Virus record (IMG/VR): IMGVR_UViG_3300044633_000899
Span: 62,001 to 126,000 of that record
Direction: 5' to 3' (one strand)
DNA: 64,000 nucleotides
Shown here: positions 1,568 through 40,456 of the stretch, one piece after another
Layout of the letters: each line of letters starts with the position of its first letter
Position numbering within the stretch: the first letter of the stretch is position 1
Notes under the pieces: generated by a model
Seen by the model: the letters and a program-made list of their open reading frames with translations, nothing else
Told to the model about the DNA's origin: nothing
Databases searched by the model: none
Position numbers and translations under genes: made by a program

Positions 1568-2644
1568 ATGAACAACAATTTAGATAAACAATACACAGAT
1601 TTATTACAGGATATTTTAGAGAATGGTACAAAAAAAGAAACTAGAAATGGTGGAACACTTTCAGTATTCGGAAGACAAATACGTCACAATATGAAAGATG
1701 GGTTTCCAGCCATTACTACCAAAAAAATGGTATTTAAGACAATGGTAACCGAATTGTTATGGTTCTTACGTGGTAGTTCAGATATTAGGTTTTTATGGGA
1801 AAACAATTGTAAAATCTGGGATGGTGATTGGGAAAAAAATTACAAAACTACTTGTTCAGAACCATATACAATAGAAGAAGTTAAACAAAAAGTAAAAGAT
1901 GGTAACCACCATTTTAACGATTCAATGTTTGATATGGGATTAATTTACGGTAAGCAGTGGAGAAGTTGGAGAGGAAAAAATGGTATGATTGGCGAGAAAG
2001 ATGAAGATGGGGTAAGAGTAATTAATTGGGAGAAAATAGATCAAATTGCAAACCTAATCAACGACCTTAAAACAAACCCAGATTCACGTAGGTTACTTGT
2101 GTCAGCGTGGAATCCCGCAGATTTACCACATCAAGTCCTTCCACCTTGTCATTATGGATTTCAAGTTTATACAAGAGAGTTGAGTGAGAAAGAAAGGTAT
2201 AATCTTTTAAAAAATTACAAAGGGTTATTATGTTATGATGGTATAGGAAATGTTATGGAATATTATGATTCTATTAATATTCCTAAACGAGCAATCTCAT
2301 TAATGTATAATTGCAGAAGCCAGGACGTACCATTAGGAACCCCATTTAATTTAGCATCTTACGGATTGTTATTAGAAATCATTGCAAAAACCGTTAATAT
2401 GGTTCCTGACGAATTGATTACAAATATGGGTGATTGTCATATCTATCTAAATCAAATTGATGGTGTTAAAGAACAATTAACAAGAGAACCTTATCCACTA
2501 CCAACCCTAAAACATATGAAAACTGATGAGTTTTATAAATCATTAGGTGAGGATTTATCATTGTTATCACATTTAACAGTTGATGATTTTGTTTTGGAAA
2601 ACTATAAGTCACACCCAAAAATTTATTTTCCGCTTTCAAATTAA
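1568..2644 (+). CDS. thyA: thymidylate synthase
   Basis: TTKK..K....ELLWFLRG, MGLIYGKQWR, DSRRLLVSAWNP, LPPCH, RSQDVPLGTPFN, GDCHIY motifs. Confidence 0.97.
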   Translation: MNNNLDKQYTDLLQDILENGTKKETRNGGTLSVFGRQIRHNMKDGFPAITTKKMVFKTMVTELLWFLRGSSDIRFLWENNCKIWDGDWEKNYKTTCSEPYTIEEVKQKVKDGNHHFNDSMFDMGLIYGKQWRSWRGKNGMIGEKDEDGVRVINWEKIDQIANLINDLKTNPDSRRLLVSAWNPADLPHQVLPPCHYGFQVYTRELSEKERYNLLKNYKGLLCYDGIGNVMEYYDSINIPKRAISLMYNCRSQDVPLGTPFNLASYGLLLEIIAKTVNMVPDELITNMGDCHIYLNQIDGVKEQLTREPYPLPTLKHMKTDEFYKSLGEDLSLLSHLTVDDFVLENYKSHPKIYFPLSN

Positions 2645-14562: not shown

Positions 14563-15065
14563 AAATAATTATAACCGAAAGCCAATATAAATTCTTAACT
14601 GAAAATTTTGATTCTGTTTTGGATATATACTCAAAGAAAAATAAAGGTGAAACATTAAAACCTTCCGAATTGGATGTGTTAAAAGTTTTTAATGATTATG
14701 TAAAAAAAGGTGGCACACCAGAAGAATTTGTTTTTAATCAAGACGATGTTTATGGATTTGATGAGAGAGAAGGTATGTTATTTAATTATAATCTAAAAGG
14801 TCGGCCATTACAATTTGAGTTCACTGAAGAAACTGAAACCGAAAATGATATTGACTATTTTGGTGAAATAACATTTGATGGTGATGAATACCTCGGCGTT
14901 ATTGTAACGGATAAAAATGGTTATTTAATTGATTATGATTTTTACTCAACGTTAACAAAAGGTGATGTTAGATTACAGGAATTATTAATTGTTGATAATA
15001 GTGATGCAGAATTTAGAAATTTTTTACAAGAAATGGTTATTAACGTTTTAATAAATGAAAAATAA
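14559..15065 (+). CDS. leader-bearing acidic hypothetical protein
   Basis: MKIIITESQYKFLTE start. Confidence 0.65.
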   Translation: MKIIITESQYKFLTENFDSVLDIYSKKNKGETLKPSELDVLKVFNDYVKKGGTPEEFVFNQDDVYGFDEREGMLFNYNLKGRPLQFEFTEETETENDIDYFGEITFDGDEYLGVIVTDKNGYLIDYDFYSTLTKGDVRLQELLIVDNSDAEFRNFLQEMVINVLINEK

Positions 15066-15453
15066 TTTAAAAGAAAAATTAAAGGACTTAATCAAAAAGG
15101 TTGGTTTTGAATCAACGATAAGAGTTGTCGGATCCTTGGATAAAACTTTTGAAATTTTTGACATTAAAAAGCCAATGGATTTCTTAAATTTATTTAATGA
15201 CCTAGAATCAGTTCAGAGTGAAGAACGTCAAGAGTGGACATTGTATAGATATAAAAAGGGACATAATTTAATGGTTTACAATAGAGAAAATGATTATGTT
15301 TATATCAATTATGATGAAATTTGGTCAGTTTTGGGAGATAAATTCGGTCTTAACTACTCTGAAATACAGGATCTTACAAAGAGATGGTTGGATGAGGTCT
15401 ACAATTTAAGGGGAGTCACACCTAACGAAGTATACTATTACGTTTGGTGCTAG
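15055..15453 (+). CDS. family-A paralog 1 with spacer-encoded C-terminus
   Basis: Close paralog of 16977-17426; ends WLDEVYNLRGVTP-NEVYYYVWC*. Confidence 0.7.
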   Translation: MKNNLKEKLKDLIKKVGFESTIRVVGSLDKTFEIFDIKKPMDFLNLFNDLESVQSEERQEWTLYRYKKGHNLMVYNRENDYVYINYDEIWSVLGDKFGLNYSEIQDLTKRWLDEVYNLRGVTPNEVYYYVWC

Positions 15454-15536: not shown

Positions 15537-16973
15537 GTGAAAATTTTATTAAACGAGAAACAATTCAAAAATATTGTAGTTCTATTATCTGAAGATGACG
15601 ATAAAAAAATAAACGTAATGTTTGTTGGTGACAGCCATAGTGATGGCCAAGGGTACACCTGGAATTATGATTTAGAGAAACAACATCCAGAATGGAATGT
15701 AACACATATTGTAAAAGGTGGTAAAACAACAGAGTGGATGTTAGAAAATATGTTACCAGAATTATCAAAAAAACATTATGATTTAGTTTTCATATTAGGT
15801 GGTACAAATGATGTTATGTCACCATTACCAATAGAGACACCAATCAACAATATTCAAAAAATGGTTAATGCAGTCAACACCCAAGGTGGAAAAGCAATTG
15901 TTGTTATCGGATTTGATAGTGAATCTATTATGGATGTAAATAAATTACGAACAACGAAATATTGTGACAAAGAATGTTTAAAAAAGTTTAAACCAAAAAG
16001 AGTTGAATTCCAACGTAAATTAGAAAGTTCAATCCAAAACGCAACAATAGTACCACCACTTGTTGGTGATTACACTTGGGCAAATGATGGTATACACGTC
16101 GGCGGATCAAAACACAAACTATTATCAAGTACCGTTGAAAATTATATAACAAAAGGTGAGGTTAAAAACCAAAAAAAATCACTAATTAATCAACTATTAG
16201 ACAAGTATACAGAAGTAATCCAAAACAAAAGTACAATTGACGCAATAAGTCCAAGAAAAGAGATTAAATTATTACAAATACTTTTTTCAATTGCTGAAGG
16301 TCAAAAGAACAGAAATTTTTCTGGTACATTAGATTCTGACACCATTACTAGACTTAAAAAATATCAAACAACTAATAATTTACCGAATACAGGTATTTTT
16401 GATTATCAAACAATTTATAGTATAAACAACAAGATAAGCCCAAAATTAAATAAAGTTTTAAAACCAGAAATGGCAAAAGAAACAATATCAGATCCTGGAT
16501 CCTCAATTGTTAGTACGAGTAAATTAGTTAATGATTTAAAATCATTTGGTTTAACTGAAAATGCTGCAAAAGGTTTGACAGCAAACGCATATGGTGAAAG
16601 TGGTTTAAATTATAAAGCGAAAGGTGATTCGGGTTCCTATGCGAAGAACACTACAAAATCAATTGATATTGGTGGTAAAAAATATTGTTCATTTGGTTTA
16701 TGGCAATTTAATGTGTGTGGTGGGTTAGGTATTGAGTTTTTAAAAAAATACAATACACTTAACAGTGGTAATACGGATAAAATAGAAACTCTGTTTGATT
16801 ATAATAAACAATTAGAGATTATGGGTTCTAAGATAATGAAAGAACAATCTAAAGGTGATAAGAGTGTTAAAACTTGGATTGACTGGATTGTTGATAATGT
16901 TGAACGACCTGCTGACAAATCTGGTGCAAAACAAAAACGACAAAATTTTGCTAAACAACAAGGTTGGATATAA
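15537..16973 (+). CDS. leader + SGNH/GDSL esterase + PG-binding + phage tail lysozyme-like protein
   Basis: FVGDSHS, GGTND, DGIH; LKKYQTTNNLPNTGIFD; AAKGLTANAYGESGL..FGLWQF; GTG start after TATTTAT. Confidence 0.7.
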   Translation: MKILLNEKQFKNIVVLLSEDDDKKINVMFVGDSHSDGQGYTWNYDLEKQHPEWNVTHIVKGGKTTEWMLENMLPELSKKHYDLVFILGGTNDVMSPLPIETPINNIQKMVNAVNTQGGKAIVVIGFDSESIMDVNKLRTTKYCDKECLKKFKPKRVEFQRKLESSIQNATIVPPLVGDYTWANDGIHVGGSKHKLLSSTVENYITKGEVKNQKKSLINQLLDKYTEVIQNKSTIDAISPRKEIKLLQILFSIAEGQKNRNFSGTLDSDTITRLKKYQTTNNLPNTGIFDYQTIYSINNKISPKLNKVLKPEMAKETISDPGSSIVSTSKLVNDLKSFGLTENAAKGLTANAYGESGLNYKAKGDSGSYAKNTTKSIDIGGKKYCSFGLWQFNVCGGLGIEFLKKYNTLNSGNTDKIETLFDYNKQLEIMGSKIMKEQSKGDKSVKTWIDWIVDNVERPADKSGAKQKRQNFAKQQGWI

Positions 16974-16976
16974 GTG

Positions 16977-17426
16977 ATGAAAATAATAATAACTGAAAAT
17001 CAATATAAATTGATTAAAGAAAATATTTCTTTAAAAGAAAAATTATTGGGTTTAATCAAAAAAGTTGGATTTAAATCTGTTGTAAAAATTGTCGGATCTT
17101 TGGATAAAACATTTGAAATTTTTGATATCAAAAAACCAATGGATTTCTTAAACTTGTATAATGATTTGGAATCAGTTCAGAGTGAGGAACAACCTGATTG
17201 GACTTTATTTCGTTATGAAAAACACAAAAATTTAATGATTTACCATAGAAAAAATGACTACGTTTACATCAATTATGATGAAATTTGGTCAGTTTTGGAA
17301 GATAAATTTGGTCTTAACTACTCTGAAATACAAAAACTTACAGAGAGGTGGTTGGATGAGGTATACAATTTAAGGGGAGTCACACCAACGGAAGGAAATT
17401 GGAACCAAAAAGATTGGGTTGGATGA
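16977..17426 (+). CDS. family-A paralog 2 with leader and spacer-encoded C-terminus
   Basis: MKIIITENQYKLIKE; ends WLDEVYNLRGVTP-TEGNWNQKDWVG*. Confidence 0.7.
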   Translation: MKIIITENQYKLIKENISLKEKLLGLIKKVGFKSVVKIVGSLDKTFEIFDIKKPMDFLNLYNDLESVQSEEQPDWTLFRYEKHKNLMIYHRKNDYVYINYDEIWSVLEDKFGLNYSEIQKLTERWLDEVYNLRGVTPTEGNWNQKDWVG

Positions 17427-18638: not shown

Positions 18639-18833
18639 ATGAAAAAACCTTGTAAAGAATGTCCCCACTTTAATAGAAATCGTCATAACGATATGATTGT
18701 TGGTTTTGCTGAGAGAATTGGTAAGAAACACAATTGTCATATGACTGAAGGAAAAAAAGATTTGTGGAATGTTACAGATAATAAAATAGAGTGTTATGGA
18801 TCAAGAAAAAATAAATTGGATTATATTATCTGA
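18639..18833 (+). CDS. small Cys/His protein
   Basis: PCKECP..HNCHM..C motif. Confidence 0.55.
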   Translation: MKKPCKECPHFNRNRHNDMIVGFAERIGKKHNCHMTEGKKDLWNVTDNKIECYGSRKNKLDYII

Positions 18834-19641
18834 CCCTTTAAACACACCACCTCATCACGGGGGACCACTGATATTACACTATATATCAAAAAAACTTTTA
18901 GAGTTTGGTGATAGAGTATGTATGAATCATCCGTTTTATGAGGGGTGTGAAAAAATAACTAAAGATTTTTTAAAAACTTTAAATACTAAAGAGTGGGTGC
19001 TTATAACAACAGAAAACGATTTTAGGTTGGAAGATTTTAAATTTAAAACAGTTAGACTCATATTATTTACAGGAAAAAATATGGAAAAATACGGGAGTGA
19101 TGAATTAATATTTCAGTATGGTAAATCGTTTACTGTTGGAACTAAATATGAAAACGCTTTATCTATAAGACCGATTGTAACAAATATAAGTTTTTGGAAA
19201 GATTTAGAATGTCAGAGATCTGAAACACCACTAATACTACTTAAAAAGGGTGTTATATCTAAAGACGATAAAATTATTGAAGGTCGGTTAATTGATGAAG
19301 TAATTAATATGAATGACACAAGGGAAGTCATTGATTTTGAATTACTAAAACTTTTTAATACACATAAGACTTTTATTACATATGATAACAATACATTCCA
19401 TTCAACACAGGCAGCATTATGTGGTGCAATATCTATTGTTATCCCCGATGGTAAATTAAATGAAAAAGAGTGGAGAAGGTCTACAAAAAGAGAATATGGT
19501 ATAGCATACGGGAATAATAAAGAACAAATTGATTTTGCTTTAAATACTATTGATAATTTAAAAGAATTAATTAAATCTGAATTAAATAGAAGTCACGAAG
19601 AAATTTCTTTTCTTAGAGAAAAAGTTTTATTAAGTTTTTAA
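18796..19641 (+). CDS. putative glycosyltransferase-like protein (WavQ-like)
   Basis: GG..ILH.I...L at the N-terminus and LFN....F..YD..TF....AALCG...IVIP at the C-terminus; heads a sugar cluster. Confidence 0.4.
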   Translation: MDQEKINWIILSDPLNTPPHHGGPLILHYISKKLLEFGDRVCMNHPFYEGCEKITKDFLKTLNTKEWVLITTENDFRLEDFKFKTVRLILFTGKNMEKYGSDELIFQYGKSFTVGTKYENALSIRPIVTNISFWKDLECQRSETPLILLKKGVISKDDKIIEGRLIDEVINMNDTREVIDFELLKLFNTHKTFITYDNNTFHSTQAALCGAISIVIPDGKLNEKEWRRSTKREYGIAYGNNKEQIDFALNTIDNLKELIKSELNRSHEEISFLREKVLLSF

Positions 19642-19655
19642 TACTTATATTATAT

Positions 19656-20480
19656 ATGAAGAAGATAATTAATTTTACCCCCACTGGTACTCAAACTACC
19701 AGAGAAAACTCATACGCACCACTTGAACCTAATGAGATTGTTGATTCGGTAATTGAAGCCAATGAATTAGGTATAACATTAGTTCATTTACATGCACGTG
19801 ACGAAAATCTTAAAAACACTTATGAAGTTAAACATTTTTCAAAAATTGTGGATGGTATTAGGAAGTATTGTCCAGAACTTGTCATATGTGTTTCAATGTC
19901 GGGTAGGAATTTCCCCGAAGTTGAAAAAAGAACGGAAGTTCTCCAACTTATGCCAGATATGGCTTCACTCACACTATCTTCACTTAATTTCCAAACAGGG
20001 GCTTCTATAAATGAACCTGATGTTATTATACAATTAATTAAAGAGATGGATAAGTGGGGGGTCATCCCTGAATTAGAATGTTTTGATACAGGTATGATAA
20101 ATATGACAAATAATTTAATTTCAAAAAACATTTTAAAACCACCATTTTATTTTAATGTTATTTTAGGTAATCTATATAATAGTCAATCAGATATTCTTTC
20201 TGTTGCCAATATGAAACACCAAATACCAAAAAACGCTATAACAACAATTGGTGGTATTGCGAGTCAACAATTAAAGAGTAATATTTACGGACTTATTGAT
20301 TTTGATGGGATCAGGATTGGTTTAGAAGATAATTTGATGTTTAGAAAAGGTGAGAAGGCAACAAATTCTGAATTAATAAAAAGAATACACCGAATTATGA
20401 CAGAACTAGATTTAGGTGTTATGAGTTCAAACGAATTTAGAAAATTAGGATATGAAAACAGAAACATTAATAATAGGTAA
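19656..20480 (+). CDS. beta-keto acid cleavage enzyme (BKACE/DUF849, Kce-like)
   Basis: FTPTG, VHLHAR, PDMASL, PELECFDTG, RIGLEDN. Confidence 0.88.
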   Translation: MKKIINFTPTGTQTTRENSYAPLEPNEIVDSVIEANELGITLVHLHARDENLKNTYEVKHFSKIVDGIRKYCPELVICVSMSGRNFPEVEKRTEVLQLMPDMASLTLSSLNFQTGASINEPDVIIQLIKEMDKWGVIPELECFDTGMINMTNNLISKNILKPPFYFNVILGNLYNSQSDILSVANMKHQIPKNAITTIGGIASQQLKSNIYGLIDFDGIRIGLEDNLMFRKGEKATNSELIKRIHRIMTELDLGVMSSNEFRKLGYENRNINNR

Positions 20481-21084
20481 AGGTGATGATATCATAACAA
20501 TGATATTAGATAACCTAAGTTCTGAAAATGAGACAGGTAAAATTACAATCTATAATAATTTAGATTTACCAATCAATAGTGATTTTTCTCATTCCGAATT
20601 TGAAATTAATCTGTTAAATGAATTAGAACTTTCTGATTATAACAAATGGGTTTTGGGGATTTACAAACCAAGTTTAAAAAAGAAAATTATTGATGGTTTA
20701 GAGATATATGGTCATATCAATTTTATTAATTGTATACATAAAGGTCTTGACATATCTAAAACCACAAAAGTCGGTGTAGGTTGTTTAATAAATTCTAAAG
20801 TTTCAATTGCTGCTCACACAATTATAAAAAACTATGTTTCCATTAATAGACATACGTCAATTGGTCACCACACAATTATTGAAGATTATGCCTCAATAAA
20901 TCCAGGATGTAATATTGCGGGTCATTGTCATATTGGGGAAGGGACAACAATCGGTATAGGATCTCAAATATTAGATGGTATAACAATTGGGAAAAACACA
21001 ATTATTGGTGCCGGTTCGGTTGTTACGAGAGATATACCAGATGGTGTTGTTGCCTGGGGGAGTCCTTGTAAAATTAAAAACTAA
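20452..21084 (+). CDS. hexapeptide-repeat sugar N/O-acetyltransferase (PglD/NeuD family)
   Basis: Left-handed beta-helix repeats, IGAGSVVTRDIP..VVAWGSP. Confidence 0.88.
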   Translation: MKTETLIIGKGDDIITMILDNLSSENETGKITIYNNLDLPINSDFSHSEFEINLLNELELSDYNKWVLGIYKPSLKKKIIDGLEIYGHINFINCIHKGLDISKTTKVGVGCLINSKVSIAAHTIIKNYVSINRHTSIGHHTIIEDYASINPGCNIAGHCHIGEGTTIGIGSQILDGITIGKNTIIGAGSVVTRDIPDGVVAWGSPCKIKN

Positions 21085-21086
21085 TT

Positions 21087-21734
21087 ATGGCTGAAGGTGT
21101 TCACAAAATAACTCAATCATTTGAGGAAGAAATTTCTAAATATACGGGCGCTAAATATACCGTTGCTTTAGACAATATGAGTAACGCGTTATTTTTGGCT
21201 CTCTATTATGAAAATAAAATCAAAAATAACACATCTGAAACAATAAGTATTCCTTGTAGAACCTACCCTTCTGTTCCGTGTGAAATTATACATGCCGGTT
21301 TAAAAGTTAATTTTTATGAAGTTAATGGTGATACAATCAAAGGGGCTTATCAACTGATAGGAAGTAAGGTATGGGATTCCGCTTTGAGGTTTACAAATGA
21401 TATGTATTTACCAAATACACATATGTGTTTATCGTTTACTGGGCCATATAAACAACTTAAATTAAGTAAAGGTGGTGCAATTTTAACCGACGACTATGAC
21501 GCTTATAAATGGTTTAAAAAGGCAAGATTTAGTGGTAGAGATGAATGTTCTTACCATATTGATAATTTTGACTTAAATCCTATTATTGGTTGGAATTTTT
21601 ATATGATGCCTGAAATATCCGCTAGAGGTTTATTACTTATGAGTCAATTTTATAATATGGATGGAAGTAAAAAACAAAATGAAGATTTGGAATTATCTTA
21701 TCCAGATTTATCCAAGTTTGAAATTTGGAGGTAA
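21087..21734 (+). CDS. DegT/DnrJ/EryC1/StrS-family PLP aminotransferase (short)
   Basis: FEEEISKYTGAKY.VA....S.ALFLAL, WDSA, SF...K.L....GGAILTDD, GWNFYM. Confidence 0.82.
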   Translation: MAEGVHKITQSFEEEISKYTGAKYTVALDNMSNALFLALYYENKIKNNTSETISIPCRTYPSVPCEIIHAGLKVNFYEVNGDTIKGAYQLIGSKVWDSALRFTNDMYLPNTHMCLSFTGPYKQLKLSKGGAILTDDYDAYKWFKKARFSGRDECSYHIDNFDLNPIIGWNFYMMPEISARGLLLMSQFYNMDGSKKQNEDLELSYPDLSKFEIWR

Positions 21735-21848: not shown

Positions 21849-22460
21849 ATGAAAACTGAATTGACATACGAAGAAAGAATCGCATGGTTTGTTGAAAACT
21901 ATTATGAGAGTGGTATGGAATACCAAAGTCTTTTAGTTACAATGAAGGAGGAGGATTTAGATAATTTTAAATGGTACGATGATTTCATATCAATACCAAA
22001 ACACAAAGTAGAATCAAAATTTGGAACATATATGGAAACAGAAAGTACAACAAAATTAACCAGTGATAAGATCACAAGGTTTGTTGAAAGGTTGAAAAAA
22101 ATTGGAATTGATGTGAAACTAATAGGAAACTTTCCTTGGGTTTATATTGATGAGATCTGTGGGATCAGAGTTACTGAAAGTTTTGCTGCGAACCACGGAT
22201 TTACTTTGATATTCCTTCCTGGTAGAAACGATAGTCCTGTGTCTGAATTTACAGACATTGAAGAGATTTTCAAACTTATACGAAAGTACGTTAAAGAAGC
22301 AAAATTTAGACAAATTGAAAAGTTAAAGGCTCAGATTGAAGTATTAGAAAGTATTTGTGATAATACTATGGAACAAGACGATGCAACTAAATACTTTGTG
22401 TTGTGTAAGTTATCTGATTTAAAAATAAAACTAAAAGAAATAAAAAATGAAAATCAATAA
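21849..22460 (+). CDS. hypothetical protein
   Basis: 203-aa ORF. Confidence 0.65.
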   Translation: MKTELTYEERIAWFVENYYESGMEYQSLLVTMKEEDLDNFKWYDDFISIPKHKVESKFGTYMETESTTKLTSDKITRFVERLKKIGIDVKLIGNFPWVYIDEICGIRVTESFAANHGFTLIFLPGRNDSPVSEFTDIEEIFKLIRKYVKEAKFRQIEKLKAQIEVLESICDNTMEQDDATKYFVLCKLSDLKIKLKEIKNENQ

Positions 22461-22860
22461 ATTATTTTTAGATGACGTAAGAATCCCAAAAGATGCGATA
22501 GGATTAATTCCGGATAAACATAATCAGTTTTACTTCTCTAACGATTGGGAGATAGTAACAAACTATGATGATTTCGTTCAACACATTGAACTTAACGGAG
22601 TTCCTAACTTTGTATCATTTGATCACGACCTGGGTGATACCGCAATGGATGAGTATTTTAGAAATGTTGCAACCAATGGAACTTTGGATTATGAAAACAT
22701 AGAAGAAAAAACTGGTCTTGACTGTGCAAAATTTCTTGTGGAATATTGTGTAGATAAAAACCAACCATTACCAGAGTATTTGGTTCATAGTGCAAACCCA
22801 GTTGGAAAAAGAAATATTGAAGGATTTTTAGAAAACGCAAAAAAACATTTAAGTATATAA
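22447..22860 (+). CDS. cyclic-phosphate-processing receiver domain protein
   Basis: LFLDDVR.P, SFDHDLG, TGLDCAKFL, VHSANPVG. Confidence 0.75.
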   Translation: MKINKLFLDDVRIPKDAIGLIPDKHNQFYFSNDWEIVTNYDDFVQHIELNGVPNFVSFDHDLGDTAMDEYFRNVATNGTLDYENIEEKTGLDCAKFLVEYCVDKNQPLPEYLVHSANPVGKRNIEGFLENAKKHLSI

Positions 22861-22863
22861 ATT

Positions 22864-23157
22864 ATGGAAGACATTACATTAAAAAGAGTTTGGACAATAG
22901 AAGGACATAAATTTGAAATAACCAGTTATTTAAAAAAATATGGTTTAACTATAACACATATTATTAAATATGAGGAAAAATCTGGGTACGCTAGCGGATT
23001 TCAAATGAATCATCATTATATTAACCTTGAAAATTTATCAGAAAATTATGATCAAATATTTGAAAAATGTGAGGCAATTGCTGAAAGATTATCCGGATGG
23101 AAAAATGTGATAGATAAGTTATCAGAAGATGGATTTGAAATTATAGAAAATATATAA
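22864..23157 (+). CDS. hypothetical protein
   Basis: ORF in operon. Confidence 0.6.
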   Translation: MEDITLKRVWTIEGHKFEITSYLKKYGLTITHIIKYEEKSGYASGFQMNHHYINLENLSENYDQIFEKCEAIAERLSGWKNVIDKLSEDGFEIIENI

Positions 23158-23160
23158 ATT

Positions 23161-23685
23161 ATGGATCTTACTAAATTAACAATGGACGAACTTATTTCAT
23201 TACGAAATAAAATTGAATATAAAATAAATTCTTATGAAGATGGATATTTGTATATCTGTTCTGTCCGTCAGTTCGGTAGTGTCTGGGAAGAAAGACCAAG
23301 TAGTTTATATGGTTTAAAAGAACTTTGTGATTCATATAATGGAGACAATGGTATTGTTGATGTCTATACCAACAACCCAAACTTAGAATTTCCCGAAATG
23401 GAGTTTGAAAACTATGGTGATGTTATGTTTATTAAATCTGAAGATGATTACAGAGAGTGGATTAAACACACTAAGGCTAAAAACCTTATTGAAGATGTAA
23501 CACAACGACTTGATGAGTGGGATGAAAGTAAAGATTTACCATTTAAGTATCGTCCTTCTTTTGCCCCACATTGGACAAGGGAACAAGTTAGTGAATGGGT
23601 TACAGAGTTTGAAAGTAAGAAGTGGGATTTTGTTGAACCAAGATCAATGAAAGTAAATTATTTTGAAGAAGATAGTGACGAATAG
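23161..23685 (+). CDS. hypothetical protein
   Basis: ORF in operon. Confidence 0.6.
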   Translation: MDLTKLTMDELISLRNKIEYKINSYEDGYLYICSVRQFGSVWEERPSSLYGLKELCDSYNGDNGIVDVYTNNPNLEFPEMEFENYGDVMFIKSEDDYREWIKHTKAKNLIEDVTQRLDEWDESKDLPFKYRPSFAPHWTREQVSEWVTEFESKKWDFVEPRSMKVNYFEEDSDE

Positions 23686-23709
23686 AAAAATAATTAATAT
23701 ATTTGCATT

Positions 23710-23958
23710 ATGGAAAATCAAACATTAGGTCAAATATTGGGTGCTAAGTCTAGTGGAATATTCATTAATGATAAACACGAGTATTGTTCGGTATATTCGT
23801 ATTACATCAGTAATAAACGGAAATTCCAGATAATCTTTTCAAAAGGGCTTACAAGTATTGCAACAAGACCAGCAATAAACTCAACATCAGAAAAAAAAAT
23901 ATTAAAGTTTTTGAGTTCTGAAAATTTTGTAATAGTAAAAACTGAAAATAATATATAA
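23710..23958 (+). CDS. hypothetical protein, paralog of 27883-28116
   Basis: TLGQ.L..KSSG.F.N...EYC.V..YYI.NK.KFQ.IFS...INSTSEKKI shared; TATATTTG at 23698-23705. Confidence 0.7.
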   Translation: MENQTLGQILGAKSSGIFINDKHEYCSVYSYYISNKRKFQIIFSKGLTSIATRPAINSTSEKKILKFLSSENFVIVKTENNI

Positions 23959-23959
23959 T

Positions 23960-25075
23960 ATGGAAAATCAAAATAGCGTAGCATACGTAGGAAAAATAGG
24001 TTCAGTATCTGAAATACCAGGCGCTGACAACATAGAATTAGTAACGATTGGTGGTTGGACTGCAATAACCAAAAAAGGTGAATATCGTATAGGATCTTTA
24101 GTAGTTGTTGCTACAACGGATGCTATAATACCACAGAAACTTTCTGATGGAATAGGTGTCACTAATTATTTAAGAAAGGGTCAAAGAGTAAGAACAGTTA
24201 AGTTACGTGGGGTTTATTCAGAATGTTTAATTATTCCAATATCAAATGTTCCCGATTCATATCGTTATGATGGATGTGACTGTATGGAATTGTTAGGTAT
24301 AAACAAGTATGAACCACCAGTTAAAACAATCACCTTATCATCTGGTGGTCGTAAGTTTAAATACCACCAAAACCCAAATTTCCACATTTACCATAAGTTT
24401 CCAAACCAAAAGAACGTACCAGATATGTTCAATGAGGACGATGCGGTTGTAATAACTCGTAAGTTACACGGAACTAATGCCAGATTCGGAATAATCAGAA
24501 AGAATAAACTTTCTTTATGGGATCGTGTTAAAATGTTCTTTGGTGATAAATGGGCCGGATTTGAATACGTCGCGGGCAGTCACAACGTAGAGAAAGGATC
24601 CGACTCGCAAGGTTTTTATGATACAAATGTTTGGTTTGAAATCGCTGATAAATACAATATCAAATCAAAACTCTTGGAACACGTAAAAGACACATATGAA
24701 TATCTTGAAAGTGGTTTTATTGTGTATGGTGAAATATATGGCGCTGGAATACAAAAAAACTATGACTATGGTTTAACTGAAATAAAGTTTGCTGGATTTG
24801 ATGTTGAGGTTGATGGAAAATACGAACCATATATGAGAGAAAAGGTACACTTTGAAGTAATGGATCTACCACAGGTTGAGGTATTATATAGTGGTAACTG
24901 GAATAAAGAAATGCAAGATAGTTTTGTGTTTGATAATTTCATAGAAGGAACAAAAGTTCCACACGAGGGTGTTGTTGTGAAAACTGTAACTGGTGTTCGT
25001 AGTAAAGTTTCAAAATGTATAAATCCTATGTATTTAATCTACGGAGAAAAACATAACGTTGGTGATTCACATTAA
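23960..25075 (+). CDS. ATP-dependent RNA ligase (Rnl2/DRB0094-like)
   Basis: N-terminal IPGADNIEL..IGGW....KKGEY; motif I KLHGTN; VYGEIYG; FDV; EGVVVK; K.IN..YL. Confidence 0.85.
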   Translation: MENQNSVAYVGKIGSVSEIPGADNIELVTIGGWTAITKKGEYRIGSLVVVATTDAIIPQKLSDGIGVTNYLRKGQRVRTVKLRGVYSECLIIPISNVPDSYRYDGCDCMELLGINKYEPPVKTITLSSGGRKFKYHQNPNFHIYHKFPNQKNVPDMFNEDDAVVITRKLHGTNARFGIIRKNKLSLWDRVKMFFGDKWAGFEYVAGSHNVEKGSDSQGFYDTNVWFEIADKYNIKSKLLEHVKDTYEYLESGFIVYGEIYGAGIQKNYDYGLTEIKFAGFDVEVDGKYEPYMREKVHFEVMDLPQVEVLYSGNWNKEMQDSFVFDNFIEGTKVPHEGVVVKTVTGVRSKVSKCINPMYLIYGEKHNVGDSH

Positions 25076-36794: not shown

Positions 36795-37208
36795 ATGAAA
36801 ACAAATAAGAACATAGCGGTTGTGGGAACACGTAACTTCACAGATAAAGATACCTTTAAAAGGATAATAAATGAGGTTATAACCATTGAAGGTATACCCA
36901 ATAAAATTGTATCTGGTGGTGCTATTGGTGCTGACACCTTAGCATTTGAATGGGCAATAGAAAATAGTACCGAGATTTTAGTGTTCAAACCAAGGTACGA
37001 GGACTTCCCCAAGAAAAAAAGATGGATGGCACCTAAAGAGAGAAATACGACAATCGTAGATAACTCAGACATAGTTTTGGCTTTTTGGGATATGGAATCT
37101 ACTGGTACTAAAGATACAATCAACAAATCAATAAAAAAAGGAAAAAAGATATATTTATACAATATAAAAGAAAATAATGTATCTTTAATTGGTGATGAAA
37201 TTGTATGA
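36795..37208 (+). CDS. SLOG-superfamily (YspA/DUF2493, DprA-like) protein
   Basis: IAVVGTR, IVSGGA.GAD, RN..IV..SD...AFWD..S.GT..TI. Confidence 0.8.
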   Translation: MKTNKNIAVVGTRNFTDKDTFKRIINEVITIEGIPNKIVSGGAIGADTLAFEWAIENSTEILVFKPRYEDFPKKKRWMAPKERNTTIVDNSDIVLAFWDMESTGTKDTINKSIKKGKKIYLYNIKENNVSLIGDEIV

Positions 37209-37941
37209 TGTTTTTAAGAAATGTGTTTATGAGGGTATTCGTTACGATAGTGAGGAATACAAGATAGATTACGAAAAAGATTTGGTTGACGATTTGATTA
37301 GATTCAGTGATAAAATATCTTTTAAAAAGGATGAATACGGGAATGTGGTCATCATAGGTATTCCAATTAAAAAATCAGAACATAAAAATAAGTTGTTAAA
37401 CGACATTAAAAAGGGTATTAATATTAACCCAGAGGATCTTTCAACCATTATTGACAAGATAGTTACTAATTTAACCGAATATGTAAATTTGGACGATTTT
37501 GATTATGTGGTTTCACCTAAAAGTTCCTCACTTTTAACAAAAAGTTTAATAGATAAACTAAATTCGTTGAGTAATAAACCAACCTTTATTAGTGATATGT
37601 TCTTAAAGAATGATATTGATAATATTTGGTTAGATATTGAGGCTGCGGAAAAAGAACTCAGCAATAAATTCTTAAAGAAATTGGTTAAGGATTTTGAACG
37701 ATCCAAGGGGATTGAAGGTCAGTCAATGAAACTACAGCCCTTAACAAACTTTCAAAGGAAATATGTTAGGGATATGTTAAAAGTAAATCCAAAACATAAT
37801 AATATTCTTACAGATATGTTGGATAAAAACATATTAGTTATTGACGACATATTAACAACGGGAAAGACTTTGAACGATATTCGGGATACGTTATCTAAAT
37901 TAAGTACTGGACAAATAAAATTATTTACAATGTTTGGATGA
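37195..37941 (+). CDS. phosphoribosyltransferase-domain protein
   Basis: ILVIDDILTTGKTL PRPP-binding motif. Confidence 0.75.
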   Translation: MKLYDVFKKCVYEGIRYDSEEYKIDYEKDLVDDLIRFSDKISFKKDEYGNVVIIGIPIKKSEHKNKLLNDIKKGININPEDLSTIIDKIVTNLTEYVNLDDFDYVVSPKSSSLLTKSLIDKLNSLSNKPTFISDMFLKNDIDNIWLDIEAAEKELSNKFLKKLVKDFERSKGIEGQSMKLQPLTNFQRKYVRDMLKVNPKHNNILTDMLDKNILVIDDILTTGKTLNDIRDTLSKLSTGQIKLFTMFG

Positions 37942-38423: not shown

Positions 38424-39947
38424 ATGAACTTACAAAAATCCACAAGAATAATAAAAGAAGAATCTAAATTACCCATTAATATTTTGAGGAGGTTAGATTT
38501 ATCGGTTGGATTATTTGATAGGATGAAAAAAGCGGCATTAATTAAATCAATTGATGGACCATTTAACGTTCATAATGTTGCAAGATATGCCGCGGAAGAA
38601 ATTATACCTTGGCATGATGAGGATGGTAATGATTATGAGGATTTTGGTATTTGGGTTTACGATTTTAAAGATTTTTTAATTAACAAATATGGAGAACAGA
38701 CCAAAGAATATATAAACAAAGTATATCCTCAAGGTGGTTTTAAGAGTGATGGTTATGATTATATTTTCTTGAAACATTCCGATATAAATGGTGGAAGTGG
38801 ATTTAGTGAGAGTTATAATACTTGGGGTAATTTACTTTTAGGTCGTGGATGGCGGTTTCCATTGGATTGGTGGGAGATCAAAGCCGATTTGGATAAGATG
38901 GACGAGGGAAAAAAAATAATATTAAAACCAAACGACAAACATAATACTTATGGATATTATTTCTCAATTATAAAAAAGAATTCAAATGTACAAGAGACCA
39001 TCAAAAAAACATTAAGGGAAGAACTGGAATCAAAATGGAATATAGGAAACAAACACGGAAACAAATATAATTATCAACACGGGTTTTGTCATTACTTTGC
39101 ATATAATATTATTGGTAAATTAAAAAAATTATATCCAGATAGAAATATTAGATATTACTTAATACTGGCCGATGAGGTTTATGATTTTGACGAGGGGGAA
39201 GTGGAGCAATCATATCTTGTTCACGCTTATATAAAGATTGATGATTTATATTTAGATTCAAATGGGTTTGCAACAGAAGAAGAAATAAAACAGAGAACCC
39301 AGGGTTGGTATGATAGACAATTAAACCAATTACCAGAAGATTATAGGATAGATATTTGGCACGATGAATATAATAAAATACCAAAATATTATTTTAATAA
39401 CCAATTCTGTAATGTAGGTACAATAAAAAAAGATGTAGAAAAATTCTTATCACATCCAGAGGTAAAAGAACTATTACAAATTATTGATAATAATCAACAG
39501 ATAAAGGAGGGGTTACCAAACCGAACCAAAGAATTAATTTTAGATAAGATTAGGACAATGGGGTTTGACGATGCTGCAAGTATAGTTGGTGGAAAAGATA
39601 ACCTTTCAAAAATAACTGGGATAAATACGTATGAAGAATATCTTAACTTGTTTAATGATCTTACTATTTCAACCAGTCAAGAAAAACCATATATAACATT
39701 ATATAAGAATAACAAAGGTATAAATGTTTTCGTTAAGTATTATGAGGCTAAATCCAAAATGTCTTATATTTTTATTAATCACAACATACTTCAAAAACCA
39801 CTTAGTGAATATAACATACAAAAAAGTAGAGTATTAAGAAAATGGTTAAAAAATACTTATGATATAGAAGTTAAAAATACGGATTTTTTACAAGCATACT
39901 ACCCAGGTGAAGAAAATGCTGGGGGTTATTTAGAATATTTAACATAA
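38424..39947 (+). CDS. mosaic leader-linked polyprotein (RR domain, unknown domains, family-A domain)
   Basis: MNLQKSTRIIKEE; internal NVQETIKKTLREE; C-terminal LILDKIRTMGF..A..IVGG..FNDL..WLKNTY. Confidence 0.7.
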   Translation: MNLQKSTRIIKEESKLPINILRRLDLSVGLFDRMKKAALIKSIDGPFNVHNVARYAAEEIIPWHDEDGNDYEDFGIWVYDFKDFLINKYGEQTKEYINKVYPQGGFKSDGYDYIFLKHSDINGGSGFSESYNTWGNLLLGRGWRFPLDWWEIKADLDKMDEGKKIILKPNDKHNTYGYYFSIIKKNSNVQETIKKTLREELESKWNIGNKHGNKYNYQHGFCHYFAYNIIGKLKKLYPDRNIRYYLILADEVYDFDEGEVEQSYLVHAYIKIDDLYLDSNGFATEEEIKQRTQGWYDRQLNQLPEDYRIDIWHDEYNKIPKYYFNNQFCNVGTIKKDVEKFLSHPEVKELLQIIDNNQQIKEGLPNRTKELILDKIRTMGFDDAASIVGGKDNLSKITGINTYEEYLNLFNDLTISTSQEKPYITLYKNNKGINVFVKYYEAKSKMSYIFINHNILQKPLSEYNIQKSRVLRKWLKNTYDIEVKNTDFLQAYYPGEENAGGYLEYLT

Positions 39948-39949
39948 TA

Positions 39950-40456
39950 ATGAGAGAGAAACCAATTTTAACAAAAACAAATGTATTTTCCGATGATAGG
40001 GGAACGTTTTTTCCTTTAGACCTTAAAGAACCTAGGTGGATACAAAGTAACGTCAGTATAAGTAAAAAATGGACACTTAGAGGATTACACCACCAGATTG
40101 GTAACACAGCACAAAGTAAGTTGGTAACGGTGATTAAAGGGGAGATTTTGGACTTTATCGTTGATTTAAGAAAGGAAAGTTTCGGAGACGTGTTTTTCTT
40201 TAGGATGCAACCTGGGGATCAACTATACGTACCAAAAAGATTCGCACACGGATTCTTGGCACTTCAAGAAGATACAATTATCCAATACTTGGTGGATAAT
40301 GATTATTCACCAAAGACCGAAATGAGTTTTGACTGGAAATCAATACCAATGATTAAAGAATCAATATTAACTGAAGTTGGTGACAGTAATAATTTATATC
40401 TATCACCCAAAGATATGTTAGGTGAACCACTTGACAAAAAATGGATGGAAGAATAA
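39950..40456 (+). CDS. rmlC: dTDP-4-dehydrorhamnose 3,5-epimerase
   Basis: FSDDRG.F, Q.N.S.S....LRGLH.Q..Q.KLV.VI.G.I.D..VDLR, HGFL, Y.VDN.Y. Confidence 0.9.
   Translation: MREKPILTKTNVFSDDRGTFFPLDLKEPRWIQSNVSISKKWTLRGLHHQIGNTAQSKLVTVIKGEILDFIVDLRKESFGDVFFFRMQPGDQLYVPKRFAHGFLALQEDTIIQYLVDNDYSPKTEMSFDWKSIPMIKESILTEVGDSNNLYLSPKDMLGEPLDKKWMEE

What the first reader, a model, noticed from the sequence alone, without database searches (positions are those of the whole stretch)
18796..21734. BKACE enzyme embedded in an amino-sugar acylation/glycosylation cluster
Seen: a GT-like gene, a DUF849/BKACE, a PglD/NeuD-type acyltransferase and a DegT-type aminotransferase, tightly packed; rmlC lies at 39950. 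Known: BKACEs convert a beta-keto acid plus acetyl-CoA into an acyl-CoA plus acetoacetate, and DegT plus PglD make N-acyl-4-amino-deoxysugars. Inference: the BKACE supplies an unusual acyl-CoA for N-acylating a nucleotide sugar that is then transferred to phage DNA, virion proteins or the host surface. This would be a potentially new modification pathway.
Basis: partly seen in the sequence, partly recalled or inferred. Interest (0 to 1): 0.62.

Follow-up and report, generated by a model that had tools for sequence, protein, structure and literature searches.

The report
Phage BKACE paired with sugar N-acyltransferase

Summary
The four genes are real and sit exactly at the stated coordinates. 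They are a compact GT-B-fold protein (18796-19641), a BKACE (19656-20480), a PglD/PerB-type hexapeptide N-acyltransferase, here HEX (20452-21084), and a 215-aa miniature DegT-fold protein that keeps the PLP lysine and aspartate (21087-21734).

HEX sits beside BKACE in 36 of 36 viral loci found with BKACE, directly downstream in 35 and one WbqC gene away in L032. Of 48 judgeable loci found with HEX, 47 have BKACE beside it. BKACE-linked HEX proteins form one supported clade, and the two proteins co-diverge (r = 0.71).

The same module (BKACE-HEX-miniDegT-small GT2) occurs in Bacteroidota chromosomes. In four Cytophagales it is followed by an Amj-type flippase.

The most likely function is that BKACE makes a non-acetyl acyl-CoA for this HEX clade. 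The chemistry is inferred, not shown.

Caveats:
- The catalytic-site Tyr of canonical BKACEs is an invariant Phe here.
- The "DegT" is not a standard aminotransferase.
- rmlC is unlinked.
- The phage encodes no NDP-sugar dehydratase or nucleotidyltransferase.
- The acyl group and the glycosylation target are unknown.

None of 50,697 GenBank phage records has a BKACE, and no paper found describes the pairing. I rate it a new variant of a known kind.

The parts
18796..19641 (+). U281: a 281-aa compact GT-B-fold protein, a putative glycosyltransferase or related group transferase. It is an accessory, variable member of the cassette.
   Evidence: No Pfam or PHROG hit. The AF2 model has pLDDT 75 and its Foldseek top hits are all GT-B enzymes (Pvg1p, WaaG, BshA, AviGT4). 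Homologues of 50-96% identity exist only in metagenomes. They lie next to BKACE-HEX in L044-L046, and next to a mini-DegT plus a PglD-like gene without BKACE in an NCBI contig. U281 is absent from the 36 IMG/VR BKACE loci.
19656..20480 (+). BKACE (DUF849), a Zn-dependent TIM-barrel beta-keto acid cleavage enzyme of 274 aa. Proposed to supply an acyl-CoA.
   Evidence: PF05853, E 8e-61. The best solved relative is Kce 2Y7D, E 1e-32. H44, H46, E224 (Zn ligands by alignment), E141 (catalytic base) and R220 are invariant in 23 homologues. Kce Tyr145 is an invariant Phe143 here, and Kce Glu14 is Gln13 (residue roles).
20452..21084 (+). HEX: a PglD/PerB-type left-handed beta-helix N-acyltransferase of 210 aa. 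Its start overlaps the BKACE stop by 29 nt.
   Evidence: Hexapep, E 7e-17. Solved relatives are PerB 4EA7 (E 5e-20), PglB 4M98, VioB and PglD. The invariant His139 aligns with the PerB residue that is His in 4EA7 and Asn in the variant 4EAA. HEX belongs to a clade made up only of BKACE-adjacent proteins (SH-aLRT 96).
21087..21734 (+). mini-DegT: a 215-aa miniature DegT/DnrJ/EryC1-fold, PLP-type protein. Putative sugar aminotransferase.
   Evidence: PF01041, 46.6 bits, covering profile positions 26-103 and 167-246 only. AF2 pLDDT is 90. Foldseek and VIA top hits are sugar aminotransferases, Z 19. D97 and K122 are invariant and align with the PLP Asp and Lys of a full-length DegT. A 75%-identical paralogue lies at genome 198850-199491.

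Best explanation
The window carries a mobile four-gene sugar-tailoring cassette from a lake-water jumbo phage, probably of a Bacteroidota host.

Proposed mechanism (the enzyme activities below are inferred):
1. The mini-DegT aminates a keto-sugar nucleotide supplied by the host.
2. BKACE uses acetyl-CoA to cleave a beta-keto acid into acetoacetate plus a shortened, non-acetyl acyl-CoA.
3. The dedicated PglD/PerB-type acyltransferase (HEX), translationally coupled to BKACE, transfers that acyl group to the sugar's amino group.
4. The GT-B-like protein (U281), or other phage glycosyltransferases, pass the N-acylated amino sugar to an acceptor.

Shown here: family and fold assignments, intact catalytic residues, near-obligate co-occurrence and co-divergence of BKACE and HEX, and association with glycosyltransferases (with a flippase in bacteria).

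Inferred: the enzyme activities, the acyl-CoA hand-off, the acyl group and the acceptor. Candidate acyl groups from known BKACE chemistry are 3-hydroxybutyryl, glyceryl, formyl and 3-aminobutyryl. For the acceptor, my ranking by judgement is virion proteins or a host envelope glycan ahead of DNA.
For: - Family assignments and intact active sites.
- HEX lies directly downstream of BKACE, usually overlapping it, in 35 of 36 IMG/VR loci found with BKACE. In the 36th it is one WbqC gene away.
- Converse test: of 49 loci found with the HEX clade, 47 have BKACE beside it (directly upstream on the same strand in 44, one WbqC gene away in L184, on the opposite strand in L182 and L186). One is cut by a contig end and one lacks BKACE.
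- All 36 distinct HEX sequences immediately beside BKACE (viral and bacterial together) form one clade, SH-aLRT 96, with no unlinked HEX inside. The label needs 3 changes on the tree against 28 in shuffles.
- BKACE and HEX identity matrices correlate at r = 0.71 (Mantel p 0.0005). BKACE against mini-DegT gives 0.24.
- mini-DegT plus a generic PglD-like HEX is the common core in phages: at least 598 hits, and HEX next door in 66 of the best 80. Only 1 of those 80 has BKACE, and that one carries the BKACE-type HEX. BKACE therefore marks a specialised sub-variant, as expected if it changes the acyl donor.
- The glycan context recurs. The module sits inside the large glycosyltransferase cluster of related 274-290 kb phages. 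In Bacteroidota chromosomes it is BKACE-HEX-(miniDegT)-small GT2, followed by Amj in Emticicia, Aquirufa, Arcicella and a Cytophagaceae MAG.
- Known BKACEs do release unusual acyl-CoAs: glyceryl-CoA (proposed, bioRxiv 10.1101/205583) and formyl-CoA (PMC11961710).
- A divergent BKACE (35% identity) sits near a PglD_N-containing HEX in another viral contig, L190, so the pairing recurs beyond the core family.
Against: - No biochemical data exist for any member.
- Position Tyr145 of Kce (Tyr173 of PdKce), implicated in canonical catalysis, is an invariant Phe here. The same is true of BsfD, which does not release an acyl-CoA.
- No gene that would make a free beta-keto acid is visible in the cassette.
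- The phage encodes no NDP-sugar dehydratase, epimerase or nucleotidyltransferase. The sugar substrate is therefore assumed to come from the host.
- mini-DegT lacks about 40% of a normal DegT. Its activity is unproven, and it is absent from 8 of 36 viral loci and several bacterial loci.
- Co-evolution of HEX with BKACE could reflect a special sugar substrate rather than a special acyl donor.
- One HEX-clade locus has no BKACE (L168).
- A structural test of BKACE-HEX binding could not be run.
Confidence: 0.5

Rival explanations
1. Non-canonical BKACE chemistry. The enzyme does not make an acyl-CoA. Like BsfD, it acetylates the alpha-carbon of a beta-keto-acid substrate, which then decarboxylates. 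That substrate could be a sugar-nucleotide keto-uronic acid, giving a carbon-extended keto sugar. The mini-DegT then aminates this sugar and HEX N-acetylates it with ordinary acetyl-CoA. HEX co-evolves with BKACE because its sugar substrate is unusual.
For: An invariant Phe143 replaces the canonical Tyr, as in BsfD (F166). The BKACE-type HEX differs most from generic phage HEX in the N-terminal, sugar-nucleotide-binding half: generic relatives match only from about residue 50-105 onward. BsfD shows that the family can carry out biosynthetic C-C chemistry.
Against: The phage BKACE is short (274 aa) and looks too short to carry BsfD's roughly 20-residue insertion after strand beta-3; I did not align it to BsfD column by column. 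3NO5 also has Phe at this position and its activity is unknown, so Phe is not diagnostic. No BKACE is known to act on a nucleotide sugar. No enzyme that forms a keto-uronic acid is encoded by the phage.
Confidence: 0.15
2. The BKACE-HEX pair acts on a small molecule rather than a sugar. It could be an auxiliary metabolic module handling an amino or keto acid, for example N-acylating an amino-keto-acid or beta-amino acid. Its position next to glycosyltransferases would then be incidental.
For: All characterised BKACEs work in small-molecule catabolism or natural-product synthesis. The cassette also occurs as an isolated block in variable surroundings.
Against: The closest solved relatives of HEX are all nucleotide-amino-sugar N-acetyltransferases, and the catalytic His is conserved. 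A DegT-fold protein whose nearest structures are sugar aminotransferases accompanies the pair in 28 of 36 viral loci. A glycosyltransferase (c3, c5 or U281) lies next to the pair in most loci, and an Amj flippase follows in four bacteria.
Confidence: 0.1
3. Ordinary acetylation. HEX is a plain acetyl-CoA-dependent N-acetyltransferase. BKACE only adjusts the CoA or acetoacetate pools, or is a decaying passenger gene.
For: Every solved close relative of HEX uses acetyl-CoA.
Against: BKACE active-site residues are invariant across homologues of 56-80% identity, so purifying selection is acting. BKACE is tied to one HEX clade only, while hundreds of phage mini-DegT/HEX pairs do without it. The genes overlap in a way that suggests translational coupling.
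Confidence: 0.1

Closest known systems
PglE/PglD (Campylobacter bacillosamine) and Per/PerB (GDP-perosamine synthase plus N-acetyltransferase) pairs
   Same: A DegT-fold PLP enzyme sits next to a two-domain LbH N-acyltransferase with a catalytic His. PerB, PglB and PglD are the best solved matches of HEX, and perosamine synthase, PseC and DesI are the best structural matches of mini-DegT.
   Different: The known pairs use acetyl-CoA and full-length (about 360-390 aa) aminotransferases, and no BKACE is involved. Here the aminotransferase-like protein has 215 aa, and HEX belongs to a separate clade locked to a BKACE.
Anthrose operon antABCD of Bacillus anthracis (from my own knowledge, not tested here)
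   Same: The logic is the same. One operon encodes an enzyme that prepares an unusual acyl-CoA (AntA), a glycosyltransferase (AntB), a sugar aminotransferase (AntC) and an LbH N-acyltransferase (AntD) that installs the unusual acyl group.
   Different: The acyl-CoA there is made by an enoyl-CoA hydratase, not a BKACE. AntD belongs to a different LbH subclass. The system is bacterial (spore glycan), not phage.
Kce and other characterised BKACEs (Kce 2Y7D, PdKce/BKACE15 8RIP, deoxyribonate-pathway BKACE)
   Same: Same Pfam family. The Zn ligands, catalytic Glu and Arg are conserved. The canonical reaction gives acetoacetate plus an acyl-CoA: 3-aminobutyryl-CoA (Kce, by my recall), formyl-CoA or glyceryl-CoA.
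   Different: All known members are catabolic or engineered; none is in a phage or a glycan cluster. Here Tyr145 is Phe and Glu14 is Gln. Best full-length bit scores to solved BKACEs are 117.2 (Kce), 104.7 (3NO5) and 102.2 (9ZSC); identity was not computed.
BsfD (flavophos biosynthesis), a non-canonical BKACE homologue
   Same: It has a biosynthetic rather than catabolic role, and it has Phe at the canonical Tyr position.
   Different: BsfD has a roughly 20-residue insertion with Arg91 for a phosphonate substrate, and it releases no acyl-CoA. The phage enzyme is short (274 aa), which leaves little room for such an insertion; no direct alignment to BsfD was examined.
Arn (L-Ara4N) pathway and phage Gtr seroconversion modules (from my own knowledge)
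   Same: The bacterial version of the module (aminotransferase-like, N-acyltransferase, small GT2, flippase) has the same outline as ArnB / ArnA formyltransferase / ArnC / ArnEF. GtrB/GtrA also use a GT2 plus a flippase to deliver a sugar on a lipid carrier.
   Different: The flippase here is Amj-type, not ArnEF or GtrA. N-acylation is by an LbH enzyme, not a formyltransferase. The phage copies lack any flippase. Lipid-carrier use was not tested.

Membership tests
BKACE (PF05853 / DUF849) | Full-length match to the family profile above the curated cut-off | tested here: met
   206 bits against a cut-off of 24.8, residues 3-264 on profile positions 2-271 of 274. Kce 2Y7D E 1e-32.
BKACE (PF05853 / DUF849) | Zn-binding His-x-His and Glu, catalytic-base Glu (Kce E143 / PdKce E171), and Arg (Kce R226 / PdKce R254) | tested here: met
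   H44, H46, E224, E141 and R220 are invariant in 23 sequences and align with the Kce residues. Residue roles come from PMC11961710; the Kce ligand identities are from my own knowledge.
BKACE (PF05853 / DUF849) | Active-site Tyr (Kce Y145 / PdKce Y173 / ObcA Y322) implicated in canonical catalysis | tested here: not met
   An invariant Phe143 occupies this position. The same substitution is found in BsfD and in 3NO5. The role of this residue is stated to be unclear.
BKACE (PF05853 / DUF849) | Acetyl-CoA-dependent cleavage of a beta-keto acid to acetoacetate plus an acyl-CoA | not testable with these tools
   Needs an enzyme assay.
PglD/PerB/NeuD-type sugar N-acyltransferase | C-terminal left-handed beta-helix of hexapeptide repeats with a catalytic His | tested here: met
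   Hexapep E 7e-17. The invariant H139 aligns with the PerB residue that differs between 4EA7 (His) and the variant 4EAA (Asn).
PglD/PerB/NeuD-type sugar N-acyltransferase | N-terminal Rossmann-like nucleotide-sugar-binding domain (PglD_N) | tested here: inconclusive
   The window's protein has no PF17836 hit. Alignments to PglD, WeeI, VioB and 7L7Z start at residues 63-67, so residues 1-62 remain unassigned. A distant paired HEX (L190) does hit PglD_N.
PglD/PerB/NeuD-type sugar N-acyltransferase | Acyl donor is acetyl-CoA | not testable with these tools
   This is the central open question. Co-inheritance with BKACE suggests a different donor.
DegT/DnrJ/EryC1/StrS sugar aminotransferase | PLP Schiff-base Lys and the Asp that binds the pyridine nitrogen | tested here: met
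   K122 and D97 are invariant in 19 sequences. They align with the Lys and Asp of a full-length DegT and with ColD position 188.
DegT/DnrJ/EryC1/StrS sugar aminotransferase | Complete two-domain architecture of about 360-400 aa | tested here: not met
   The protein has 215 aa. The Pfam match covers only profile positions 26-103 and 167-246 of 360. About 24 N-terminal residues, an internal segment of about 36 residues and most of the C-terminal domain are missing. The remaining fold still aligns at Z 19.
GT-B glycosyltransferase (U281) | Two Rossmann-like domains with a C-terminal nucleotide-sugar-binding motif | tested here: inconclusive
   AF2 pLDDT 75 and pTM 0.65. All top Foldseek hits have the GT-B fold (prob about 1.0), but TM is 0.3-0.49 and rmsd 9-14 A. 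No sequence-family hit.
RmlC as a member of this cluster | Co-location or co-conservation with the BKACE/HEX genes | tested here: not met
   The PF00908 match is genuine. It lies 18 kb away and is absent from the flanks of all related viral loci. One RmlC-like ORF lies about 5 kb from the module in Aquirufa, next to housekeeping genes.

The most novel reading that the evidence does not exclude
The BKACE-HEX pair is a previously unrecognised route for tailoring glycans. [quoted passage not shown] A dedicated PglD-clade enzyme puts that group on an amino sugar. Freshwater Bacteroidota and their phages use the sugar to decorate cell-surface glycans, virion proteins or possibly DNA. In the more radical version, the Phe-variant BKACE performs BsfD-like C-C chemistry on a sugar-linked beta-keto acid and creates a new carbon-extended amino sugar.
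Probability: 0.4. Interest if true: 0.75.

Novelty: new variant of a known kind. Interest (0 to 1): 0.64.

Why it matters
BKACEs are known only from catabolism, one phosphonate antibiotic pathway and synthetic biology. A BKACE tied to a sugar N-acyltransferase would give the family a new biological role and add a new way of generating acyl diversity on amino sugars.

The module is abundant in lake metagenomes and is shared by jumbo phages and their likely Bacteroidota hosts. It may therefore affect phage-host recognition, either through surface glycan variation or virion glycosylation.

The widespread 215-aa mini-DegT (at least 598 viral hits) is interesting in its own right as a minimal PLP sugar-aminotransferase scaffold.

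Two cultured bacteria, Emticicia sp. CRIBPO and Aquirufa sp. 1-SAACH-A3, carry the module, so the hypothesis can be tested directly by genetics and glycan analysis.

Tried and rejected
- **Split DegT.** I asked whether 21087-21734 plus 21849-22460 is a broken full-length DegT. Rejected: the 215-aa form is conserved as such in hundreds of contigs, and the downstream gene belongs to another family.
- **U281 and c3 as homologues.** c3 is the roughly 320-aa gene upstream of BKACE in 24 loci. BLASTP found no similarity to U281. In L044-L046 both are present side by side.
- **Promoter and terminator scan of 17.0-23.2 kb.** Promoter-like sites were at chance level and no terminators were found. This is uninformative, and the sigma-70 consensus is not appropriate for Bacteroidota.
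- **Single-sequence HEX scan of viral contigs.** It found only one locus. I repeated it with an alignment.
- **BKACE in GenBank phages.** No match.
- **Literature searches** for BKACE or DUF849 together with phage, acyltransferase, O-antigen or glycosyltransferase found nothing relevant. The NetSyn BKACE context study covers 725 mostly proteobacterial sequences, and the passages I read describe no sugar context.
- **Kce structure paper.** It could not be read. Kce residue roles other than E143, Y145 and R226 therefore rest on my memory.
- **Complex prediction for BKACE + HEX.** There is no verdict on physical binding.
- **RNA evidence.** Metatranscriptome-library contigs of a 92-97% relative cover parts of all four genes. 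The tool warns that this does not prove transcription, so I do not count it as expression.
- **DNA modification as the target.** The phage has no TGT/DpdA and does have a ThyA-family gene. This neither supports nor excludes DNA as the target.


Full report
**Setting.** The window is bases 62001-126000 of a 296,330-bp IMG/VR virus record that CheckV rates complete. GC content is about 29%. The stretch recurs in lake-water metagenomes from many studies, and exact contigs occur in two runs other than the likely source sample. The only cultured relatives for any of the four genes are the Flavobacterium phages vB_FspM_immuto. All bacterial homologues of the module are Bacteroidota, apart from one Cloacimonadota MAG. 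The likely host is therefore a freshwater Bacteroidota.

**Observation.**
- 18796-19641 (281 aa)
- 19656-20480 (274 aa)
- 20452-21084 (210 aa)
- 21087-21734 (215 aa)

They are separated by a 14-nt gap, a 29-nt overlap and a 2-nt gap.

The second ORF is a full-length BKACE (PF05853, E 8e-61). Aligned with Kce (2Y7D, E 1e-32), it keeps His44/His46/Glu224, the catalytic-base Glu141 and Arg220. All are invariant in 23 homologues. The roles of the Glu and Arg come from PMC11961710.

Two positions differ from Kce. Glu14 is Gln13; by my recollection this residue binds the substrate's amino group. The active-site Tyr145 is an invariant Phe143. The same change is seen in the non-canonical homologue BsfD and in the uncharacterised 3NO5.

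The third ORF is a hexapeptide-repeat acyltransferase (HEX). Its best solved relatives are PerB, Neisseria PglB, VioB and PglD. Its invariant His139 aligns with the PerB residue that is His in 4EA7 and Asn in the variant 4EAA.

The fourth ORF is not a normal DegT. It has 215 aa and matches PF01041 only at profile positions 26-103 and 167-246. Its AF2 model (pLDDT 90) still aligns to sugar aminotransferases at Z 19 over 195 residues. Asp97 and Lys122 are invariant and align with the PLP Asp and Lys of a full-length DegT.

The first ORF has no family hit. It models as a compact GT-B fold (pLDDT 75; all top Foldseek hits are GT-B enzymes, TM 0.4-0.49).

The rmlC-like cupin at 39950 is real but lies 18 kb away. 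It is not found in the flanks of any related viral locus.

- Searching IMG/VR with the BKACE gave 36 loci at 56-80% identity. HEX lies directly downstream in 35 of them, usually overlapping. In the 36th it is one WbqC gene away. mini-DegT lies within the flank in 28, before or after the pair.
- The converse search, using an alignment of BKACE-type HEX, gave 49 loci with a full-length match. Of these, 47 have BKACE beside HEX: directly upstream on the same strand in 44, one WbqC gene away in L184, and on the opposite strand in L182 and L186. One locus is cut by a contig end and one (L168) lacks BKACE.
- Searching with mini-DegT gave at least 598 viral hits. Of the best 80, 66 have a PglD-like HEX next door but only one has BKACE.
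- On a tree of 84 HEX proteins, the 36 that are immediately BKACE-adjacent (viral and bacterial) form one clade (SH-aLRT 96) with no unlinked member inside.
- Pairwise identities of BKACE and HEX correlate at r = 0.71 (Mantel p 0.0005). BKACE against mini-DegT gives 0.24, and mini-DegT comes in two subtypes that are swapped independently.

mini-DegT plus a PglD-like acyltransferase is therefore a common phage core. BKACE plus its own HEX clade is a specialised, tightly co-inherited variant of it.

**Wider context.** Two architectures exist.
- In 24 loci the genes form a small cassette, c3-BKACE-HEX-(miniDegT), in variable surroundings. c3 is a roughly 320-aa protein without a Pfam hit. Its Atlas structural look-alikes are GT domains of phage Aah/TibC-type and other glycosyltransferases.
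- In related 274-290 kb phages the module sits inside a large glycosyltransferase cluster. That cluster is syntenic with a second cluster of this genome at 189-204 kb, outside the window. There, a 75%-identical mini-DegT paralogue sits with WbqC, a methyltransferase, another HEX, a PhyH dioxygenase and several GT2/GT1 genes.

U281 homologues flank BKACE-HEX in L044-L046. They also occur next to mini-DegT plus a PglD-like gene without BKACE in an NCBI contig.

In bacteria the order is BKACE-HEX-(miniDegT)-c5. c5 is a small GT2-like protein with a DxD motif. In Emticicia, Aquirufa, Arcicella and a Cytophagaceae MAG an Amj (lipid II flippase family) gene follows. Emticicia also has a sulfotransferase between them. 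The flanking genes are housekeeping genes, not prophage genes. The phage has no Amj homologue. It also has no NDP-sugar dehydratase, epimerase or nucleotidyltransferase, so any keto-sugar substrate must come from the host.

**Mechanism.** A BKACE and an LbH N-acyltransferase have one metabolite class in common: CoA thioesters. Canonical BKACEs turn a beta-keto acid plus acetyl-CoA into acetoacetate plus a shortened acyl-CoA. Documented or proposed products include glyceryl-CoA and formyl-CoA.

The simplest reading of the near-obligate, translationally coupled, co-diverging pair is that BKACE supplies a non-acetyl acyl-CoA to its own HEX clade. HEX would then N-acylate the amino sugar made by mini-DegT or by a host aminotransferase, and glycosyltransferases would pass the sugar on. 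I give this about 0.5.

The main rival (0.15) is BsfD-like chemistry. It is suggested by the Tyr-to-Phe change. In that case no acyl-CoA is released, and HEX co-evolves because the sugar is unusual. A small-molecule role and plain acetylation are less likely (about 0.1 each). The remaining weight is unassigned.

The target is unresolved. The bacterial GT2-plus-flippase context points to a lipid-linked envelope glycan. The phage lacks a flippase and carries many soluble GTs, which fits virion-protein glycosylation or hijacking of host machinery. DNA is neither supported nor excluded: the phage has no TGT/DpdA but does have a ThyA-family gene.

**Comparison and novelty.** The closest known systems are PglE/PglD and Per/PerB, which share the enzyme folds but use acetyl-CoA, a full-length aminotransferase and no BKACE. 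The anthrose operon shares the logic of an acyl-CoA-preparing enzyme plus aminotransferase, LbH acyltransferase and GT, but uses different enzymes (from my own knowledge). Characterised BKACEs share the family but act in catabolic or natural-product contexts.

None of 50,697 GenBank phage records has a BKACE. Full-text searches found no paper linking BKACE/DUF849 to phages or glycan synthesis. Close metagenomic homologues are numerous, at least 120 clusters at 65% identity or more, and carry only automatic names. I rate it a new variant of a known kind, interest 0.64.

**Limits.**
- No activity was measured.
- Kce residue roles other than those quoted rest on my memory, because the Kce paper was not available.
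- RNA-library contigs of a close relative cover the four genes, but this does not prove transcription.

Noticed in passing
genome 189000-204300 (outside the window; locus L007 = genome 190001-208000): A second, much larger sugar cluster lies on the minus strand. It holds GT1-like genes, GT2 genes, a PhyH dioxygenase, a GH130-like protein, a second PglD-like HEX, a methyltransferase, WbqC, a second mini-DegT (75% identical to the window's copy) and a 503-aa double GT2. It sits next to a dUTPase-like gene, a PolB-exonuclease-like gene and PhoH. In related jumbo phages the BKACE-HEX pair sits inside this cluster.
   Followed up: partly
It is usually followed by a PglD-like acyltransferase. Among GenBank phages it occurs only in Flavobacterium phage immuto (annotated WecE), in two uncultured megaphages, and distantly in Synechococcus phage S-SCSM2R. 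A minimal PLP sugar-aminotransferase scaffold would merit its own study.
   Followed up: partly
L052 10912-11727, L053 10843-11643, L051 3765-4529, L058 10209-11000: In four Cytophagales genomes the BKACE-HEX-(miniDegT)-GT2 module is followed directly by an Amj (PF10997, 'alternate to MurJ') homologue. This suggests an Amj-type protein flipping a lipid-linked sugar other than lipid II.
   Followed up: partly
window 18800 joined to 22048 (DNA run X2); 18799 joined to 22006 (RNA-library run X24): Contigs in other lake samples join the sequence just before U281 to the sequence just after mini-DegT, skipping about 3.2 kb (what lies between is not known). This may be a strain variant in which the whole four-gene cassette is absent or replaced. 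The joints have short sides (43 and 27 nt).
   Followed up: no
L190 2154-3977 (IMGVR_UViG_3300009506_000084): A divergent BKACE (35% identity, PF05853 E 7e-76) is followed by a 112-aa ORF and a PglD_N-containing hexapeptide transferase, in a viral contig with many overlapping ORFs (GC not measured). The BKACE/PglD pairing may therefore extend beyond the Bacteroidota-phage family.
   Followed up: partly
window 21849-25075 and genome 50856-51410: Directly downstream of the cassette lie a phrog_38683 protein, a cREC_REC (cyclic-phosphate-processing receiver) protein at 22447-22860, and an RNA ligase with a PHA02142 OB domain at 23960-25075. A HAD_SAK_2 ('Swiss Army Knife RNA repair') protein lies at genome 50.9 kb. 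Together these look like an RNA-repair toolkit.
   Followed up: no
window 1568-2644: A 358-aa thymidylate-synthase-family protein (PF00303, E 2e-87), longer than a typical ThyA. I did not determine whether it is a ThyA or a pyrimidine hydroxymethylase. The answer bears on whether the phage DNA could be a glycosylation target.
   Followed up: no
window 38424-39947, 15055-15453, 16974-17426 and at least 9 other genome sites: The roughly 125-residue C-terminal part of the 507-aa protein just upstream of the rmlC-like gene is repeated in a dozen proteins across the genome (28-37% identity). Two of them are small ORFs a few kb upstream of the cassette. This is a multi-copy domain of unknown function.
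   Followed up: no
window 36795-37941: A SLOG/DprA-like protein (YAcAr/YpsA-type, 137 aa) is followed by a protein with R3H and phosphoribosyltransferase domains (250 aa), 2 kb upstream of the rmlC-like cupin. In Aquirufa (L053) an RmlC-like ORF also sits next to a PRTase.
   Followed up: no
window 15537-16973: A 478-aa fusion of a GDSL lipase/acylhydrolase domain, a peptidoglycan-binding domain and a phage tail lysozyme domain. It may be a virion-associated or lysis enzyme with an esterase module that deacylates glycans.
   Followed up: no
L026, L027, L035, L043, L052 (c70 family): A Sulfotransfer_4-family protein is inserted next to BKACE-HEX in several phage loci and in Emticicia. Some versions of the product may therefore also be sulfated.
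   Followed up: no
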